Of a stretch of DNA of 64,000 bases, positions 29,202-56,576 are shown piece by piece. Position 1 is the first letter of the stretch. Every line of letters starts with the position of its first letter. The notes under the pieces were generated by a model. The model was not told the origin of the DNA. It did not search any database and saw only the letters and a list, made by a program, of their open reading frames with translations. The DNA is taken from positions 124,001 through 188,000 of the IMG/VR virus record IMGVR_UViG_3300024239_000011. One strand, 5' to 3'. Position numbers and translations under genes: made by a program.

Positions 29202-29732
29202 TTATTCCGCCAGCTTCAACATGCTGGTGATGTATCGGAACATCGGGTCAGTCTTGGTCCCGAGAACCCACCCGAAGGTGATTTGCTCTCGCATGCACAG
29301 AACTTTGTCGCCCTGTTTCACTTCCCATACCACCTGAACCTTGGTAGGGTCGAGGAAGCGTGCCGTCTCGATATCCACGAACCAGGGATAGGTGGGGTCA
29401 ACCACGATATCCGCAACGTAGCCCATGGCTTTGGCGGCGGTGATCACCATTTCGATTTGCTTGGTGGTGGCGTCTAAAGTGGTGCAGGTATTGAAACCTT
29501 TGGCCCCATTCGCTTTACCATCTTCGATGTACAGCTTCACGTCCGGGTGGTCGGTGTACAGCAGTATTTGGTTACCGCAGTGGACGCCGTGCGCACCTAC
29601 TTTACCGCCCTTCGACCCCTGACCATTCGGCTCACGCAGCGACGGTACATCAGTGGGGATCAGCCCATAGATGGTCAGGTCGCCCGGCTTGCGCGGTGCG
29701 TTAGGATCGATTTTACCAACCAGTTCAGTCAT
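29202..29732 (-). CDS. Peptidyl-tRNA hydrolase 2 (PTH2)-like protein
   Basis: TD.P...GK..AH..H, VVDPTYP, ITFGWVLG pattern. Confidence 0.55.
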   Translation of the reverse strand: MTELVGKIDPNAPRKPGDLTIYGLIPTDVPSLREPNGQGSKGGKVGAHGVHCGNQILLYTDHPDVKLYIEDGKANGAKGFNTCTTLDATTKQIEMVITAAKAMGYVADIVVDPTYPWFVDIETARFLDPTKVQVVWEVKQGDKVLCMREQITFGWVLGTKTDPMFRYITSMLKLAE

Positions 29733-29788: not shown

Positions 29789-29862
29789 TGGTGGATGAAT
29801 CGAGTCTCGAACGCGCGTTACAAATGCCGTGATGACATCTGCACATTTCCTAACGTTCACCC
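29789..29862 (-). ncRNA. Degenerate tRNA-like RNA with TCA centred in the anticodon loop
   Basis: 7-bp acceptor plus ACCA, small D arm, extended anticodon stem, mismatched T stem. Confidence 0.55.
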
Positions 29863-29867
29863 GCTAT

Positions 29868-29944
29868 TGGTCGGAGTGGGCGGTTTCGAACCGCCGATCT
29901 CATGCGCCCCATGCATGCGCGTTAGACCACTACGCTACACCCCG
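29868..29944 (-). tRNA. tRNA-Pro(GGG)
   Basis: Cloverleaf, CCA. Confidence 0.93.
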
Positions 29945-29952
29945 TTGAAGAT

Positions 29953-30029
29953 TGGTAGGAACGGCGGGGGTCGAACCCGCAGCATCACTGGTTCTACGCC
30001 AATGTGGTCTACCGATTGCCTACGTTCCC
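29953..30029 (-). tRNA. Atypical short-arm tRNA with Leu(TAG) anticodon and G33
   Basis: Loop CGTAGAA, no variable arm, CCA. Confidence 0.75.
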
Positions 30030-30386
30030 ATATGTGTTAAACTAATCCGATGCGATTTCTACGACGACCCACCCACAACACGTTCACACGAATGCTTCAA
30101 TCGGCTACGTTCGGAACCGTGAAGGGGTTGACTCATCCAGATGGCGTGTTCCTATGGGATGCCTATTATGCCGACCATTCTACGGCGGACGGGCACCTAG
30201 GGATTGATTTGATAGCTGGATACGCCGACGAAACGGTGGCACCATTCATCATCACCCATGAATTCGATGGGGTAATTAGCATTGACGATCTATCGGTCAT
30301 CCCACGGCTTCCGTTTCTGTCGAAATATCAGATCATCACCGCAGAAGAAATTTGACGCCAGACCGACTCATAGGCACATTACGCAT

Positions 30387-30585
30387 ACCGCTCGTTTTGC
30401 CGGGTGGGGAAGGTACTTGCGATGTGGCTGTATTCCTAGGGTGAGAGCAAGCGTCTGACTAAGGGTAGTTCGGGAAGCGATTCAGTAATGGTCAATTGCC
30501 GCCACGTCGTCCCTAATTTGGGTTATCATTACCCGTAAATTACCCATCTTGCTCATGAAACCCCCGGCAATTGCCGGGGGTTTCA
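30387..30585 (+). ncRNA. Candidate pseudoknotted ncRNA of about 200 nt
   Basis: TTGACG-17-CACATT promoter, nested helices, 10-bp loop pseudoknot, terminator. Confidence 0.55.
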
Positions 30586-30590
30586 TTTGT

Positions 30591-30735
30591 ATTGACCAGT
30601 TAAGGTGCCGTGATTTGCGTTTTCACGCCTGATCCAATTCAGGTGGCTTTACCATTCGCCCACTTCCCGGTAAATGGTCGGGAAGGGAGGATTCGAACCT
30701 CCAATTTGCTGTAATCACAACGAGTTCTGGTCAAT
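30591..30735 (-). ncRNA. YrlA-like Y RNA (circularly permuted tRNA-like domain)
   Basis: TTGACCAG/CTGGTCAA terminal helix enclosing T arm, loop-closed acceptor stem, D arm and anticodon-like arm. Confidence 0.7.
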
Positions 30736-30777
30736 TCTGATAGATGACATTTATCATTTCGTATGGTACAATGCGTC

Positions 30778-31260
30778 ATGCTTGTTACGATCTTCGCGGA
30801 CGCATCTTTCTGTCCGAAAACTTTCGCTGCTGGTTGGGCAGCCTGGATAAAATCCGAACGCGGCACTTATCGGGGTGATGGCGCGATGAAAACCATTGTC
30901 CCGGACAACAACCTTGCTGAACTGTATGCCGTGATTAATGCAATCAAGCTGGCATTCGTTTCGGAAGTGGCAGTAGCCGGGGATACGCTGTTGGTGGAAG
31001 CAGATAATCATCGTGCCTTGGCGATCCTAGCAAACCGAGGAAAGAACCTCACTATCCTCGAAAAGAAAGCCGCTACACTACTCAACGGATTGCGCTCAAC
31101 GTATGACTTCACCATCAAACCTAGACACGTAAAGGCGCACTGCGGGACTGCGGTACCGCGCACGTGGGTCCATGATGATTGTGACAAACGCGCTAAGGCA
31201 CGAATGCAAGAAGCGCGTGAGAAATTGGTGCCCCCGACCGGATTCGAACCGGTACCTTGA
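30778..31260 (+). CDS. RNase H-like protein
   Basis: IFADAS, NNLAELYA, EADN, RHVKAH, CDKRAK. Confidence 0.85.
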   Translation: MLVTIFADASFCPKTFAAGWAAWIKSERGTYRGDGAMKTIVPDNNLAELYAVINAIKLAFVSEVAVAGDTLLVEADNHRALAILANRGKNLTILEKKAATLLNGLRSTYDFTIKPRHVKAHCGTAVPRTWVHDDCDKRAKARMQEAREKLVPPTGFEPVP

Positions 31261-31303
31261 CGGGATTTAAAGCCGTTGCCACTGCCAATTGCGCTACGGG
31301 GGC
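31226..31303 (-). tRNA. Atypical short-arm tRNA-Leu(TAA)
   Basis: Cloverleaf, loop TTTAAAT, C31-C39 mismatch, no long variable arm. Confidence 0.75.
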
Positions 31304-31756
31304 GAAAAACTAAATAGAGTCATGAACTACGACATCAACTCCGGTATTGGTAATTGGATGAAGAAGCGCGAGACGCACCTTCACAATCACTTTGGCGATC
31401 AATGGCGCAATACCCTTTGTCGCCGGGTCCACCAGAGCTTGAAGCAAGGCATCCGGACAAGAAACGCATTTCGGCAGCGTGTTCTTAAGGCGCTTTTGCA
31501 GCACCTTAAAGGAAGATGACAACAAGCATCCCATCCGCTATATTGGATGGATTGGAGTTTGTGTCATGCTTAAGAAACATCGCGAATACCTGAAGATTGC
31601 AGAACCGATACTCAAGGAAGCGCACATTCCAGTGATAACCTGTAATGGAGGTCGTCACGTTGCGCTGATGATAAATGGGCATCGGGTTCCCATGTCCGGG
31701 TCATCCCCGGATAAATTCGCCGCTGATCTTCGTAGGATCATCCAACGCGGCAGGAA

Positions 31757-31998: not shown

Positions 31999-32655
31999 TC
32001 ACCAAATCAAATCCTCGACAAAATTCATACCGGATTTCAACCCATTCTTTGGTGGATTGTATCTAACCGTGAATGTGGTTTTTCCCAGGCAACTATCTGG
32101 AAGTCTTATTACTTTGTCTATTAACGGCAAATACACCAAAATAAGATCAATTTCTGCCGCAGAATACGTCAAAACTTTTCCATTTCCATGATCAGACACA
32201 AGGTTGATTACTATACTTCCCTGTGCTTTATCAGATTTTCCGTTTGCGTATTTTACCTGAACTCGCTTTAGTTTCTCGCCATCGTCAAGCACAAAATCAT
32301 AACGAACATCGGTAGTTGGCTTACTCAATACATACCCAAGTTCAGCAGCACGTATTTGGATTTTCAACGCCGCAATTTCACCACGCAAATTAGTGGTAAG
32401 GTTTTCATGCAACGCCTTATGCTCGATCAAACCATATTGTTCGCATCGACGCTGAAAATCATCTGCATTTTTCTTATTCACCGCACGAGCATTTTCTTGC
32501 AAACGAGATTTTAGAATTTCAGCCTGCAATGGATAATCGCGAAGCCAATAACTTGCTGTGCTTTTCGACACATTCAGTTCGGCGGATATTTCTGCCAGTG
32601 ATTTATTCTGTTTACGTAATTCTATTGCTTTTTCTCGTTCCGTTATTTTTGTCAT
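31999..32655 (-). CDS. HTH plus PD-(D/E)XK homing endonuclease
   Basis: RGEIA...RYDFVLD...RVQVK. Confidence 0.85.
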   Translation of the reverse strand: MTKITEREKAIELRKQNKSLAEISAELNVSKSTASYWLRDYPLQAEILKSRLQENARAVNKKNADDFQRRCEQYGLIEHKALHENLTTNLRGEIAALKIQIRAAELGYVLSKPTTDVRYDFVLDDGEKLKRVQVKYANGKSDKAQGSIVINLVSDHGNGKVLTYSAAEIDLILVYLPLIDKVIRLPDSCLGKTTFTVRYNPPKNGLKSGMNFVEDLIW

Positions 32656-33085: not shown

Positions 33086-33710
33086 CTATTTCAGCGCCAA
33101 TCGCAGCCGATCAACACCGATAGCCCAACCAATACCTTCAGCGTAGCGTCCGCCACCAGCAACCTGTTTCTGGGCACCAAGCGAGGAAACCTCCACCTCG
33201 AACCCATCTTCGACGTAGTACGTCAGCCCACGTTTCACCGATTCCACGAAGGTGTATTCGACCGGCAACGCATCGAGGCATCGCCGCAACAACTCCGTGA
33301 CTTCTTCCGTGTCCGCTGGACCAGACCCGCCGAGCAGTTCGACCCCAAACTGAGTGAACTCGCGGTACCTTCCCGCTTGGGGGCGCTCGTAGCGATAGCA
33401 CCGGTTACAATAGAACAGGCGCATCGGCTTTTTAGGCTTGATCTTGCTCCATTGGTCCCGATATAGCTCCTGAACCAAGCCAGTCACTTCCGGGATCAAA
33501 CAGACTGGGCGATTGCCCTTATCGTTGAAAGCCCACATCTGGTTTACGATCTCGGGACCAGCCTTATCGATGAAGGTTTGCTGTTCCCAGATTTCCGGAA
33601 GAATTACTTCCTCGAAACCAGCTTCAGTGAACTACCCTCCGAACAGTATCGATGATCATGCGGTATTGACGAGCGTCATCGCCCATCAGGACTTGTGTGC
33701 CTCGCAACAT
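33086..33710 (-). CDS. Minimal histidyl-tRNA synthetase catalytic core, split by a +1 frameshift near 33630
   Basis: MLRGT...RRVV in frame 0 joins TEAGFEEVILP...YRYERPQAGRYREFTQFGVE...RGLTYY...AGGGRY...GWAIGVDRL in the +1 frame. Confidence 0.85.
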
Positions 33711-42593: not shown

Positions 42594-43286
42594 TTAATCT
42601 ACATACCGGGCGGGGAATACCTTCGCCCACTTATCCGGGTCGTAAAATTCCCCCGCAATGGATGCCTCGAACATTTCCATCCGAACCTTCAGCATTTCTG
42701 CTGTCGGCATCGGCGGAAATAACGAGATCGGTTTGAGATCGGTCCATTTAGCCCGTCCACGCCCTTGGCGGCATGAAACCGCATATTCGTTCGTCCCATC
42801 CCGACGTTGGATGCGGTTGATCTGATAGATGGTCGTAAACGGGTTGTCTTCTGGCTCAAAAGAGAACAATTTTGACTCGACAACCTTCCGGAGGCTTTCA
42901 GGCATCAGGAGGACACTACCCGCCACATTTTCCCAATACTCACCCACCGGGGAGATCACGCACAAATGTTGCTTCTTGAACCAGTAGGACCGTGCCTTGG
43001 CTTGGGAAGCTGGATCATTCTTCTTGAACATCGCGGCGACAATGTTCTGAACGTGGTCATTTTCAAACCCGTAAGTCCGCAAACTCGGGATCGCTACTCG
43101 CACATCACGCTTTTCGATGTCTTTGAAAGGTAGATCGAAAAACATGTATTGTTGCCAGATTTCCGCATTGGAGAACTGCCGAATAGTGAACTCCATGTTT
43201 TCACCTTCCGGAAACTCCGCGAGACGAATCAGCCACTCGAAAGTGGATGGATCATAGGGGTTTGGGGAGTTGATCCATGTTTTCAT
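42594..43286 (-). CDS. Hypothetical protein coupled to aspS
   Basis: 4-nt overlap with the aspS stop. Confidence 0.65.
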   Translation of the reverse strand: MKTWINSPNPYDPSTFEWLIRLAEFPEGENMEFTIRQFSNAEIWQQYMFFDLPFKDIEKRDVRVAIPSLRTYGFENDHVQNIVAAMFKKNDPASQAKARSYWFKKQHLCVISPVGEYWENVAGSVLLMPESLRKVVESKLFSFEPEDNPFTTIYQINRIQRRDGTNEYAVSCRQGRGRAKWTDLKPISLFPPMPTAEMLKVRMEMFEASIAGEFYDPDKWAKVFPARYVD

Positions 43287-45151
43287 TTCGCGGTCACCTT
43301 GATGTGAAGTTCCTTCAACTGTTCCGGGGTGACTTCAGAGGGTGCGCCCATCATCAAGTCCTGCGCCGAGTTGTTCATCGGGAACGCCACGATCTCGCGG
43401 ATGTTCGGCTCATTCGCCAACAACATCACCATGCGGTCGATACCAGGGGCGATACCACCGTGCGGTGGTGCGCCGTAGCGGAAAGCATTGTAGAGCGCCG
43501 GGAATTTAGTCTGAACCACTGCCGGGTCATACCCAGCAATCTCAAACGCCTTCTCCATCACGTCGATGCGGTGGTTACGGATGGCGCCCGACGACAGTTC
43601 CACGCCGTTGCACACCAAGTCGTATTGATGTGCTTTGATGGTCAGCGGGTCTTGGTTCAACAACGCATCCATCCCACCCTGCGGCATCGAGAACGGGTTG
43701 TGGCTGAATTCGACCTTGCCCGTTTCCTCGTTCAATTCGAACATGGGGAAATCCACGATCCAGCAGAACTGGAAGGATTCCTCATCGTAGTTGTCCGACC
43801 GCTTGGCAGCTTCGACACGCAGCTTGCTTGCCCACTGATACGCCTCTTTCTTCGGACCAGCAATGAACATATATGATGCATCCGGTTTTTCAAATTGAGC
43901 GCATGTAGTTTCATCCATGAAATCCACGGCGATGGACCACATCTGCTCGTCGGTGAAAAACTTTTCCATCGGACCAGAAACGCCGGTCAGCACATGCGGC
44001 TCCGTGCGCGCGTGCGACAACGATTCTTTCCAATCTGTGATCTTGAAGTAGCCAAGACCGGGCATACCCAAATCCTTGGCATAGTTATCCATGTCCTTGT
44101 GCCATTTACCCGTCAGCTTTCCAGCGTCGGCATATACCGGGATGCACAACACAACACCGTTCTTATCGATGACTTCCTGAAGGAACGGTGGCGCATTCGG
44201 TGCAACAACCTCCGTAACATCACGGATATAGATGTTGTCGTCCACACGCAGATCGGGTTTGTCGTTACCAAACAATTGGATAGAAGCATCATAGGTGTAG
44301 GTTCGCCATTCCGGGTTGACGTACCAGTTGGATGTGGGTCCGCAATAACTGACTGAGGTGAATTCCTCGAACACCCGCGATACTACATCCTTGACAACGC
44401 CGAACACCTCTTCTTGGGTAGCAAATGCCATTTCCATGTCAAGCTGGTAGAACTCACCCGGCGACCGGTCAGAACGCCCAGCTTCATCGCGGAAGCACGG
44501 GGCAATCTGAAAGTACCGCTGCACCCCTGAACACATCAGAATTTGCTTGAAAATCTGCGGAGCCTGGGGCAGCGCGTAGAATTTACCGGGATGCAAACGG
44601 GCAGGCACCAAATAATCACGGGCGCCTTCCGGACTAGAAGCCGTCAGAATGGGCGTCTGAATTTCCATGAAGTCCTGGCGTACCATTTCGTTGCGCAGCA
44701 TCCAAATCACGTCGGAACGCAGTTTGAGGTTCTGCTGCATTTTCGGGCGGCGAAGATCGAGGTACCGATACCGCAGGCGAGCTTCGTCCGATGCAGTGAA
44801 ATCTTCATCGTGCAGCGTGAACGGAAGTACCGCCGCCTGATTGAAGATTTCAAACTCTTCCACGACCAGTTCATATTTGCCAACGAACCCGAGTTTTTCG
44901 TTGGTAGTGCCTTCCGGGCGCAGACGCGGCGTTCCGCGAACTTCCACACAGCTTTCTTCACGAATCTTTGCCAGGGCGGCAATGTTCGGGTTGTTGGCAT
45001 CAAGCGCACACTGCATTACGCCATCGTAGTCACGGATGTCCACGAACAACAACCCGCCGTGGTCGCGCACTCGGTGAACCCAACCGCGTAAGGCAACCTT
45101 CTGTCCAACTGAACATGAACCGGGTGAACCAATCGGATAGACGATGTACAT
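43283..45151 (-). CDS. aspS: Aspartyl-tRNA synthetase, probably non-discriminating
   Basis: RDHGG, RLRYRYLDLRR, YALPQAPQ, QIAPCFRDE, GAPPHGGIAPGIDR. Confidence 0.96.
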   Translation of the reverse strand: MYIVYPIGSPGSCSVGQKVALRGWVHRVRDHGGLLFVDIRDYDGVMQCALDANNPNIAALAKIREESCVEVRGTPRLRPEGTTNEKLGFVGKYELVVEEFEIFNQAAVLPFTLHDEDFTASDEARLRYRYLDLRRPKMQQNLKLRSDVIWMLRNEMVRQDFMEIQTPILTASSPEGARDYLVPARLHPGKFYALPQAPQIFKQILMCSGVQRYFQIAPCFRDEAGRSDRSPGEFYQLDMEMAFATQEEVFGVVKDVVSRVFEEFTSVSYCGPTSNWYVNPEWRTYTYDASIQLFGNDKPDLRVDDNIYIRDVTEVVAPNAPPFLQEVIDKNGVVLCIPVYADAGKLTGKWHKDMDNYAKDLGMPGLGYFKITDWKESLSHARTEPHVLTGVSGPMEKFFTDEQMWSIAVDFMDETTCAQFEKPDASYMFIAGPKKEAYQWASKLRVEAAKRSDNYDEESFQFCWIVDFPMFELNEETGKVEFSHNPFSMPQGGMDALLNQDPLTIKAHQYDLVCNGVELSSGAIRNHRIDVMEKAFEIAGYDPAVVQTKFPALYNAFRYGAPPHGGIAPGIDRMVMLLANEPNIREIVAFPMNNSAQDLMMGAPSEVTPEQLKELHIKVTAK

Positions 45152-55421: not shown

Positions 55422-56576
55422 TCAGCGACTTATTTGAATGAAGGTTTTAATTCGCGGGGCTACAAGGTCGCGGAACCGTTTTCCGTTGAAAATGCCATAA
55501 TGTCCCACACCTTCAACCATGTAATGGTCACGGTACGGAACATTCGGGCACAAATCGTGTGCTGCCATAGTCTGTCCAACCCCCGTAATATCGTCCTTCT
55601 CGCCCTCAATTGTCATGAGGCAAGTCTTTGAAATCATTGATGGTTTTATCAGTTGATCATGACAGACCATCGTCCCCTGTGGTAACTGATGTTCTTGGAA
55701 TACCATCTTGATGGTTTCCAAATAGAACTTCGCATCCAAGTCCATTACAGCAAGGTATTCATCATAGAATTTCTCATGATGGGCGGCGCTCTCACCATCA
55801 CCGCTGACCAAATTATCAAAATATTCGCGATGTGCTTTTACATGCCGATCAAGGTTCATTGACATAAATCCAGCAAGTTGGAGAAAGCCAGGATATACCC
55901 TGCGTCCATGTCCTTTCTTTCCCATCGAAACTGGGTAAATTAAATTCTGTTCAAACCATGAATATGGGCGTGTTGTTGCCAGTTCATCGACTTCAGTTGG
56001 GTTAATACGTGTATCAATTGGTCCACCCATAAGGGTCATGGATTTAGGGGTTGGTTCATCGTTCGCCGCGAGAAGCGACACGGCTGCTATCACCGGTACG
56101 GAAGGCTGACATACTGCAACGAGGTGGACATTCCCGTTGAAGTATCGAATGAAGTCCATTAGGTACGTGACATAATCATCGAACCCAAAAACACCATCCT
56201 CAAGAGGAACTGCCCCCGCATCTCGCCAATCAGTGATGTAGACATTGTGATCCGGAAGGAACTCCTTCACTGTTCCCCGCAATAATGTTGCGTAATGCCC
56301 AGACATAGGAGCTACCACAAGCACATTAGGACGCCCCGCGTCCACCTCTGCAAACTGCAAAAGGTCACAGAACGGTTTAGTCAGAACATCCGTCTCCGCG
56401 ACCCCCAAATCGAATTCCGGGCGGGTATAACTGTTCGTGGAACGTTGGACCAGTTTGTTTAGGGCGTACCATTCACGGGCAAAGGGAACCGATTGTGCCA
56501 AATTGGCATTCACCGTTGCTGCAAAATTTACATGAGAACGAATAACGTTGCTTATAGAATAAAAATTATAGAGCAT
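55422..56576 (-). CDS. phaZ: Intracellular polyhydroxyalkanoate (PHB) depolymerase
   Basis: VAPMSGHYATLLR, AVCQP catalytic Cys, YPGFLQL, EGEKDDI, VGHYGIFNG. Confidence 0.93.
   Translation of the reverse strand: MLYNFYSISNVIRSHVNFAATVNANLAQSVPFAREWYALNKLVQRSTNSYTRPEFDLGVAETDVLTKPFCDLLQFAEVDAGRPNVLVVAPMSGHYATLLRGTVKEFLPDHNVYITDWRDAGAVPLEDGVFGFDDYVTYLMDFIRYFNGNVHLVAVCQPSVPVIAAVSLLAANDEPTPKSMTLMGGPIDTRINPTEVDELATTRPYSWFEQNLIYPVSMGKKGHGRRVYPGFLQLAGFMSMNLDRHVKAHREYFDNLVSGDGESAAHHEKFYDEYLAVMDLDAKFYLETIKMVFQEHQLPQGTMVCHDQLIKPSMISKTCLMTIEGEKDDITGVGQTMAAHDLCPNVPYRDHYMVEGVGHYGIFNGKRFRDLVAPRIKTFIQISR

What the first reader, a model, noticed from the sequence alone, without database searches (positions are those of the whole stretch)
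30387..30585. Plus-strand pseudoknotted ncRNA of about 200 nt opposite the tRNA array
Seen: nested helices 30445-51/30548-54, 30463-70/30538-45 and 30485-92/30525-32. The apical loop (30501-30515) pairs with upstream 30419-28 and 30437-41. G-U pairs favour the plus strand, and it has its own promoter and terminator. I do not recognise the family.
Basis: seen in the sequence. Interest (0 to 1): 0.6.

Follow-up and report, generated by a model that had tools for sequence, protein, structure and literature searches.

The report
Structured tail of a small phage gene
The stretch is most likely the 200-base untranslated tail of a small orphan gene of a 543-kb phage, closed by an ordinary terminator hairpin; one of its proposed helices looks truly maintained, while the elaborate pseudoknot as drawn is no better than chance.

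Summary
The strong hairpin at 30555-30586 is a plus-strand intrinsic terminator. The body (30387-30554) folds no better than shuffled sequence (z -0.36). Stems of 8 bp or more are as common in shuffles. The three nested helices are worth only -16 kcal/mol, against an MFE of -51. No Rfam family matches, and no promoter passes the scan. The upstream ORF 30050-30355 is a real plus-strand gene (8 synonymous against 4 non-synonymous codon changes), so the stretch is at least its 3' UTR. Only one variant haplotype exists (L008, 94% identical). In it the 10-bp helix 30419-28/30501-10 takes four substitutions and keeps every pair, one of them G-C to A-U (P about 0.004 under neutral placement). It is the only one of 14 substituted stems to survive. 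There are no paralogs, no homologs in 22 related phage records, and no expression data. Verdict: a lineage-specific 3' UTR with probably one conserved long-range helix. Interest is low.

The parts
30050..30355 (+). ORF101, an orphan protein gene (101 aa; JGI aa from 30092). The finding lies directly downstream of its TGA stop.
   Evidence: Against haplotype L008 there are 8 synonymous and 4 non-synonymous codon changes, 9 of 13 at third positions. No Pfam or PHROG family matches. The only relatives are its own 90% cluster. The Atlas model is poor.
30352..30380 (+). It is weak and overlaps the ORF101 stop codon.
   Evidence: Read. It scores 8 of 12 and is not reported by the promoter scan, whose threshold is 9 of 12.
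30395..30418 (+). The most variable stretch of the locus, with no conserved pairing.
   Evidence: 30395-30446 differs at 33% between the two haplotypes, including three 1-nt indels. ORF101 differs at 4%.
30419..30428 (+). 5' strand of the one supported helix. It pairs with 30501-30510.
   Evidence: The helix has 10 bp and -16.5 kcal/mol. In L008 G30419A and G30421A keep pairing, the latter together with C30508T.
30429..30449 (+). Local hairpin (30429-35 with 30443-49) stacked on the long-range helix.
   Evidence: RNAalifold consensus. In L008 two U-G pairs become C-G and an A.A mismatch becomes G-U. This hairpin was found after the fact, so it counts as weaker evidence.
30501..30510 (+). 3' strand of the supported helix.
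   Evidence: G30506A turns U-G into U-A. C30508T compensates G30421A. All 10 pairs are kept despite 4 hits, P 0.004. It is the only one of 14 substituted stems to survive.
30445..30554 (+). They are present but unsupported.
   Evidence: Their joint energy is -16.2 kcal/mol against an MFE of -50.7. Helix 1 loses a pair in L008 (A30446T gives U.U). Helices 2 and 3 are invariant. Their 3' strands lie in a block of zero divergence that runs on to 30758.
30555..30586 (+). Intrinsic terminator: a 14-bp G+C-rich hairpin with an AATT loop, followed by TTTGTATT.
   Evidence: Terminator scan. It is a perfect 16/16 inverted repeat and is identical in both haplotypes. The tail on the minus strand is not T-rich. 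The weak Rfam hits here are all terminator look-alikes.
30675..30705 (-). Context: a remnant of a tRNA 3' half (T arm and acceptor 3' strand). It is not part of the element.
   Evidence: It repeats the 3' ends of the neighbouring tRNAs. No full tRNA is found, even with introns allowed. There are weak tmRNA and tRNA-like hits.
30778..31260 (+). Context: the next plus-strand gene, RNase H, with its own promoter-like site at 30744-30772.
   Evidence: Pfam PF00075. The promoter scan gives 10 of 12 with an extended TG.

Best explanation
The stretch is the long (about 200 nt) 3' untranslated region of a small orphan plus-strand gene (30050-30355). The gene sits in the tRNA-rich region of a 543-kb phage. 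The transcript ends at a classic intrinsic terminator (30555-30586).

Within this tail a 10-bp long-range helix (30419-28 with 30501-10) closes a domain of about 92 nt that begins with a small hairpin (30429-49). This helix appears to be maintained by selection.

What is shown: the gene is real, the tail is non-coding, the terminator is there, and the helix is kept through four substitutions.

What is inferred: the tail is transcribed together with the gene. The closed domain then acts at the RNA level, most likely as a 3'-end stabilising or processing structure. Alternatively it is the body of a small RNA derived from the 3' UTR, whose single-stranded C/U/A-rich stretch 30511-30554 sits in front of the terminator.
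For: - ORF101 is under purifying selection.
- No open frame spans the region, and the indels between haplotypes are not multiples of 3.
- The terminator is called on the plus strand only.
- No promoter is found between the ORF and the structure.
- Helix 30419-28/30501-10 was proposed from the window alone. In the independent haplotype L008 it takes 4 substitutions and keeps all 10 pairs, including G-C to A-U. Random placement of the 24 observed substitutions gives this in 0.4% of trials.
- Of 14 substituted stems of 7 bp or more, the other 13 lose pairs.
- The neighbouring bona fide tRNA-Leu shows the same kind of signal between the same two haplotypes, with 1 compensatory and 1 one-sided change.
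- The consensus fold of both haplotypes uses this helix, with 100% of cells paired.
- The structure conservation index is 0.86, against 0.74 in column shuffles (P 0.03).
- One metagenome contig joins 30022 to 30592. ORF, tail and terminator are therefore missing or replaced together, as one unit would be.
Against: - Only two haplotypes exist, so all covariation rests on one comparison and about four events.
- After correction for the five helices tested, P is only about 0.02.
- Thermodynamic stability of the body is at chance level, and the alifold z-score is only -1.6.
- The 5' part of the tail is the fastest-evolving piece of the locus (33%), as in an unconstrained spacer.
- The perfect conservation of the 3' part continues far beyond the element, which looks like a recent recombination block rather than constraint.
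- No transcript data cover it.
- In L008 the helix is also a perfect DNA inverted repeat, so a DNA-level role is not excluded.
Confidence: 0.5

Rival explanations
1. One reading: an independent plus-strand ncRNA gene of about 200 nt. It would have its own promoter at about 30352-30380 and a fold of three nested helices locked by loop-to-5' pseudoknot contacts.
For: All the pairings exist, and four G-U pairs fit only the plus strand. The terminator is real. A TTGACG lies 30 nt upstream of the proposed start. The main pseudoknot helix is kept through compensation. The three substitutions within 30447-30500 fall in loops of this model.
Against: The promoter candidate fails the scan (8 of 12). Helix 1 and the second loop contact each lose a pair in L008, and helices 2 and 3 are untested. 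The nested trio is worth -16 kcal/mol against -51 for the best nested fold. Substitutions at 30431-33 and 30446 instead improve a hairpin that excludes helix 1 and the second contact. No Rfam family matches, there is no paralog, and no relative was found.
Confidence: 0.1
2. Unconstrained spacer. The tail is left-over DNA between a small inserted gene and its terminator, and every helix in it, the 10-bp one included, is chance.
For: Folding energy is at chance level. Stem counts are near shuffles. A stem as good as the best one occurs in 6% of shuffles. Divergence is the highest in the neighbourhood. The stretch is unique to this phage lineage.
Against: Four substitutions in the 10-bp helix all keep pairing (P 0.004, about 0.02 after correction). 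All 13 other substituted stems break. The structure conservation index is above column shuffles (P 0.03).
Confidence: 0.3
3. A cis-regulatory attenuator (riboswitch-like or antitermination element) that controls read-through of the terminator into the RNase H gene 190 nt downstream.
For: A structured region immediately abuts a terminator, and a gene follows on the same strand. GCCGGG at 30399-30404 could pair with the 5' arm of the terminator.
Against: That candidate anti-terminator is destroyed in L008 (C30400A). RNase H has its own promoter-like site, 10 of 12 with an extended TG. Distant RNase H homologs have no such leader. No riboswitch or leader family matches, apart from terminator look-alikes far below threshold.
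Confidence: 0.05
4. A DNA-level element: the 10-bp inverted repeat, 72 bp apart, is a protein-binding or recombination site rather than an RNA helix.
For: In L008 the repeat is a perfect 10/10 palindromic pair. Symmetric changes in both half-sites are also expected for a dimer-binding site. The locus lies in a mosaic, indel-prone tRNA region.
Against: In the window's own haplotype the repeat is only 8/10 at the DNA level, and both mismatches are G-T in plus-strand sense, i.e. tolerated only in RNA. A 72-bp spacing is unusual for an operator (my own knowledge). No terminal repeats or duplications flank the cassette.
Confidence: 0.05

Closest known systems
Rho-independent (intrinsic) terminator with a long structured 3' UTR
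   Same: It has a G+C-rich 14-bp hairpin followed by a U-rich tail. This is the first terminator after a plus-strand gene.
   Different: The gap between stop codon and hairpin is 199 nt. By comparison, 37% of the terminator-like hairpins in this genome lie within 60 nt of the end of an ORF of 90 aa or more (crude count). The gap also holds a helix that appears to be conserved.
Small RNAs derived from 3' UTRs in bacteria (DapZ-type with an internal promoter, CpxQ-type made by processing). Named from my own knowledge.
   Same: The position is right: the mRNA's 3' end, sharing its terminator. A structured 5' domain is followed by a single-stranded stretch and then the terminator hairpin.
   Different: No expression, processing site, chaperone or target is known. 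The internal promoter candidate fails the scan. The best complementarity elsewhere in the phage genome is 13 nt, which is the chance level (E 1.3).
GOLLD and ROOL RNAs: large ornate RNAs. GOLLD is often found near tRNA genes and in prophages (PMC5737381).
   Same: A non-coding, apparently structured RNA candidate in a phage, next to tRNA genes.
   Different: Those RNAs are large (ROOL averages 581 nt) with many junctions, and they are widespread. Here the element is about 170-200 nt, it has a single known lineage, and Rfam reports no match to either family even at E up to 10.
H-type pseudoknotted RNA elements in general
   Same: On paper, a hairpin loop pairs with a strand outside the hairpin.
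   Different: Only one of the two interlocked helix systems has any support. A fully nested fold that uses that same helix explains both haplotypes, with 100% of cells paired.

Membership tests
Any Rfam 15 family | A covariance-model score at or above the family's gathering threshold | tested here: not met
   The window-wide gathering scan reports only tRNAs. The permissive scan of 29900-31400 gives only sub-threshold hits centred on the terminator hairpin, the best being Leu_leader at 26 bits against 50.
Intrinsic terminator | A G+C-rich stem-loop directly followed by a U-rich tract on the transcribed strand | tested here: met
   30555-30586 has 14 pairs (9 G-C), a 4-nt loop and the tail TTTGTATT. 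It is called on the plus strand only.
Intrinsic terminator | Transcripts actually end there | not testable with these tools
   The only RNA run that holds part of the locus has no contig on 30030-30615.
Independent sRNA/ncRNA gene | Its own promoter upstream of the RNA | tested here: not met
   No site at 30340-30400 passes the scan. The best candidate I read scores 8 of 12. Phage-specific promoters are not covered by the scan.
Independent sRNA/ncRNA gene | Expression as a discrete RNA | not testable with these tools
   The metatranscriptome run X5 covers 29490-29640 and 29862-30012 but not the element, and it consists of contigs only.
   On two haplotypes, the 10-bp helix has 1 compensatory and 2 one-sided changes and none broken. 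Helix 1 and the 5-bp loop contact have one broken pair each. Helices 2 and 3 are invariant.
   z-scores are -0.36 (window) and -1.32 (L008) without the terminator, and -1.3 and -1.9 for the 96-nt domain. The alifold z-score is -1.6.
Riboswitch or attenuator with a terminator platform | A conserved alternative pairing (anti-terminator) and a regulated downstream gene | tested here: not met
   The only candidate anti-terminator (30399-30404) is mutated in L008. The downstream gene has its own promoter-like site.
GOLLD / ROOL | A match to the family model, and large size with multistem junctions | tested here: not met
   Neither family appears in the cmscan output at E up to 10. The size is about 200 nt, against an average of 581 nt for ROOL.
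Protein-coding sequence | An open frame, and indels in multiples of three | tested here: not met
   The longest frames are 30-58 aa and overlap only part of the stretch. The indels between haplotypes are 1, 1, 1 and 2 nt.

The most novel reading that the evidence does not exclude
A lineage-specific, truly pseudoknotted trans-acting ncRNA of a half-megabase phage. It would be made from its own promoter within the tRNA region and belong to no described family. The conserved 10-bp loop-to-5' helix would lock the three nested helices into a compact fold, for example to bind a protein or an RNA of the translation apparatus.
Probability: 0.08. Interest if true: 0.55.

Novelty: new member of a known kind. 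Interest (0 to 1): 0.2.

Why it matters
If the helix is real, this is one more orphan structured 3' UTR or sRNA candidate in a huge phage. That would be of local interest for how such phages organise the many small genes scattered through their tRNA regions. It opens no long-standing question. Its main value is as a calibrated negative. The elaborate pseudoknot read from a single sequence is not distinguishable from chance, and a single second haplotype was enough to separate the one helix worth keeping from the rest.

Tried and rejected
- Rfam at gathering and permissive thresholds gave nothing beyond tRNAs and terminator look-alikes.
- GenBank phages, near and distant modes, gave only a tRNA hit and a 37-nt terminator-like hit.
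- Exact-pattern scans found only the window's own contig. Three stretches were used against IMG/VR, and one stretch each against the JGI metagenome contigs and the GTDB genomes. The first IMG/VR pattern lay in what turned out to be a variable loop.
- The flanking proteins as bait in IMG/VR found no relatives.
- Word search with ORF101 found only its own 90% cluster. Three contigs are identical to the window in the element, and two more end right after the ORF.
- RNase H homologs at 31-37% identity sit in tightly packed operons without such a spacer.
- Paralogs in the 543-kb genome: none by blastn or nhmmer, and none by covariance model R1.
- R1 on 22 related IMG/VR records, found through the tail-sheath protein at 45-63% identity, gave no hit. 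All of those records are fragments.
- A full or intron-split tRNA at 30660-30760 is rejected.
- No terminal repeats flank the ORF-plus-tail cassette.
- The distance from stop codon to terminator was tested genome-wide as an outlier test. It is too crude to decide.
- Expression: the one RNA run holds only tRNA and neighbouring-gene fragments of this locus.
- ORF101 function: no result from Pfam, PHROGs or the protein atlas.

Full report
**Setting.** The window is bases 124001-188000 of a 543,035-bp IMG/VR virus record rated complete. The record carries a myovirus-type tail sheath gene. The middle of the window holds 27 tRNA genes, all on the minus strand. Small genes on either strand are scattered among them. 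The finding lies between tRNA-Leu (29953-30029, minus) and a tRNA 3'-half remnant (30675-30705, minus). On the plus strand this interval reads, in order:
- an ORF of 101 codons (30050-30355);
- the 200-nt stretch in question;
- a strong hairpin (30555-30586);
- after 190 nt, an RNase H gene (30778-31260) with its own promoter-like site.

**The observation.**
- 30445-51/30548-54, 7 bp;
- 30463-70/30538-45, 8 bp with one G-U;
- 30485-92/30525-32, 8 bp with one G-U;
- 30419-28/30501-10, 10 bp with two G-U;
- 30437-41/30511-15, 5 bp.

The four G-U pairs would be A.C mismatches on the minus strand. The hairpin at 30555-30586 is a perfect 16/16 inverted repeat. It is called as a terminator on the plus strand only. 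The claimed promoter is not found. The best I can read is TTGACG-17-CACATT at 30352-30380. It scores 8 of 12, below the scan's threshold, and it overlaps the stop codon of the ORF.

**Is it more than chance?** Mostly not.
- The z-score of -2.9 for the full 199 nt is due to the terminator. Without the terminator the plus strand scores -0.36 and the minus strand +0.71.
- The plus strand folds better in absolute terms (-50.7 against -36.6 kcal/mol). So do its shuffles (-49 against -39), because this strand is 57% G+T.
- The 168-nt body contains 20 stems of 7 bp or more, where dinucleotide shuffles give 13.8 (P 0.05). It has 7 of 8 bp or more against 5.6 (P 0.31), and 2 of 10 bp or more against 0.84 (P 0.22).
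That fold uses the 10-bp helix as an ordinary nested stem.
- A stem as good as the 10-bp helix (-16.5 kcal/mol) appears in 6% of shuffles.

**What the stretch belongs to.** ORF101 is a real gene. Against the one diverged haplotype it shows 8 synonymous and 4 non-synonymous codon changes, and 9 of 13 substitutions are at third positions. It has no Pfam or PHROG family, no useful structural lead, and no relatives beyond its own 90% cluster. The stretch after its stop codon is non-coding: there is no spanning frame, and the two haplotypes differ by indels of 1, 1, 1 and 2 nt. The first terminator downstream on the same strand is the hairpin at 30555. The simplest reading is one transcription unit made of gene, 200-nt 3' UTR and terminator. 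One metagenome contig joins 30022 to 30592. In that form the gene, tail and terminator are absent or replaced together.

**Comparative evidence.** Exhaustive searching produced exactly one informative relative. L008 is a 1.9-kb ENA contig, 94% identical over the locus. The same haplotype is seen in three DNA runs of one subsurface study. All other copies are identical to the window or stop short of the element. Divergence between the two haplotypes is very uneven:

| Segment | Divergence |
|---|---|
| ORF101 | 4% |
| 30395-30446 | 33% |
| 30447-30524 | 13% |
| 30525-30586 | 0% |
| Next 190 nt | 1.6% |

The element's 5' half is therefore the least conserved piece of the neighbourhood. The perfect conservation of its 3' strands belongs to a longer low-divergence block, and so says nothing about constraint.

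**The helices tested on L008**.
- The 10-bp helix takes four substitutions: G30419A, G30421A, G30506A and C30508T. All ten pairs survive. One G-C becomes A-U through changes on both sides, and two G-U pairs become A-U.
- The 5-bp loop contact loses a pair (G30439A gives A.C).
- Helix 1 loses a pair (A30446T gives U.U).
- Helices 2 and 3 are untouched.

The 10-bp helix was proposed from the window alone, so this is a fair test. I placed the 24 observed substitutions (11 transitions) at random within 30395-30524. At least four hits in the helix with all pairs kept occurred in 0.4% of trials, or 0.7% of the trials with at least four hits. After correction for five helices this is about 0.02.

An empirical control agrees. 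Of the 20 stems of 7 bp or more in the window's sequence, 14 are hit in L008. Thirteen of those lose at least one pair, and only the 10-bp helix stays intact.

A positive control is at hand too. The bona fide tRNA-Leu next door differs at 12% between the same haplotypes. It shows one compensatory and one one-sided change in its anticodon stem, the same kind and size of signal.

**A better-fitting fold.** RNAalifold on both haplotypes keeps the 10-bp helix as the closing stem of a domain of about 92 nt. On it sits a hairpin, 30429-35/30443-49. In this nested model all 64 cells are paired. The model was fitted to the two sequences, however, so that figure is not independent. Column-shuffled alignments give an alifold z-score of -1.6 (P 0.07) and a structure conservation index of 0.86 against 0.74 (P 0.03). 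The inner folds of the domain differ between the two haplotypes' own minimum-energy structures. Whether 30525-30554 is single-stranded (nested model) or pairs back into the domain (helices 2 and 3, a pseudoknot) cannot be decided.

**Distribution.**
- No Rfam family matches.
- There is no paralog in the 543-kb genome by sequence or by covariance model.
- The model finds nothing in 22 related IMG/VR records (2.1 Mb, all fragments). These were found through the tail sheath, whose nearest relatives are only 45-63% identical.
- Exact patterns find nothing in IMG/VR, JGI metagenome contigs or GTDB genomes beyond the window's own contig.

The element, like ORF101, is confined to one phage lineage as far as these collections show.

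**Expression.** One wastewater metatranscriptome holds 151-nt contigs identical or nearly identical to 29490-29640 and 29862-30012 (the two tRNAs). It holds nothing on the element. These are contigs at very low depth, so this is no evidence either way.

**Mechanism, with odds.**
- Most likely (about 0.5): a 3' UTR transcribed with ORF101 and ended by the terminator. It contains a selected long-range helix that closes a compact domain. That domain acts as a 3'-end stabilising or processing structure, or as the body of a small RNA derived from the 3' UTR.
- Pure spacer with chance helices: about 0.3.
- An attenuator for RNase H: about 0.05. Its only anti-terminator candidate is mutated in L008, and RNase H has its own promoter-like site.
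- A DNA-level inverted repeat: about 0.05. It does not explain why both mismatches in the window's haplotype are of the G-T type in plus-strand sense.

**Comparison with known kinds.** The terminator meets the sequence definition of an intrinsic terminator. The whole resembles bacterial 3' UTR-derived sRNAs in position and layout (my own knowledge), but none of their defining experimental features can be tested here. GOLLD is another structured RNA often found beside tRNA genes and in prophages, and ROOL has similar properties (PMC5737381). Both are far larger, and neither matches. I therefore file the finding as a new, lineage-specific member of an ordinary kind: a structured 3' UTR or candidate small RNA. 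It is not a new class.

Noticed in passing
window 29953-30029 (-), and L008:179-255: tRNA-Leu(UAG) scores only 35 bits in Rfam. It has G instead of the near-universal U just 5' of the anticodon, and the variant haplotype has C there. It differs at 12% between haplotypes, with a compensatory change in the anticodon stem.
   Followed up: partly
window 30675-30705 (-): A remnant of a tRNA 3' half (T arm and acceptor 3' strand) with no 5' half, even when introns are allowed. It suggests decay or rearrangement within the tRNA array. Depth here reaches 309 in one DNA run, because many contigs share this tRNA-like piece.
   Followed up: partly
window 30022 to 30592: One contig in DNA run X3 joins 30022 to 30592, skipping ORF101, the element and the terminator. 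It also carries small indels at 30633, 30669 and 30679. It may be a third, more distant haplotype that lacks the cassette. Its sequence could not be retrieved.
   Followed up: no
window 30778-31303: The RNase H gene (plus strand) runs 35 nt into tRNA-Leu(UAA) 31226-31303 on the opposite strand. Its last residues are encoded by the antisense of the tRNA's T arm. The variant haplotype's gene is called at 179 aa instead of 160.
   Followed up: no
window 31999-32655 (-): A 218-aa protein with an N-terminal helix-turn-helix and a PD-(D/E)XK endonuclease domain sits inside the tRNA array. This is reminiscent of free-standing homing endonucleases.
   Followed up: no
window 7582-48508 (-): All 27 tRNA genes are on the minus strand. 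ARAGORN assigns them to only seven amino acids, including 10 Leu, 8 Pro and 4 Gln. This is a strikingly redundant set and is worth checking with a second caller.
   Followed up: no
L003 (ENA ERZ27245855, contig k141_178484): A contig of 869,618 bp carries this locus, identical over the 761 bases compared (30000-30760). The IMG/VR record, however, is 543,035 bp and rated 100% complete. Either the phage genome is larger than the record, or that contig is a concatemer or chimera.
   Followed up: no
window 43283-45151 (-), 55422-56576 (-), 33086-33538 (-): The phage carries an aspartyl-tRNA synthetase-like gene, a protein with a PHB depolymerase C-terminal domain, and a 150-aa ORF with histidyl-tRNA synthetase domains.
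   Followed up: no
window 29490-29640 and 29862-30012: A wastewater metatranscriptome holds 151-nt contigs identical or nearly identical to these stretches. The phage or a close relative therefore also occurs outside the subsurface study it was assembled from.
   Followed up: no
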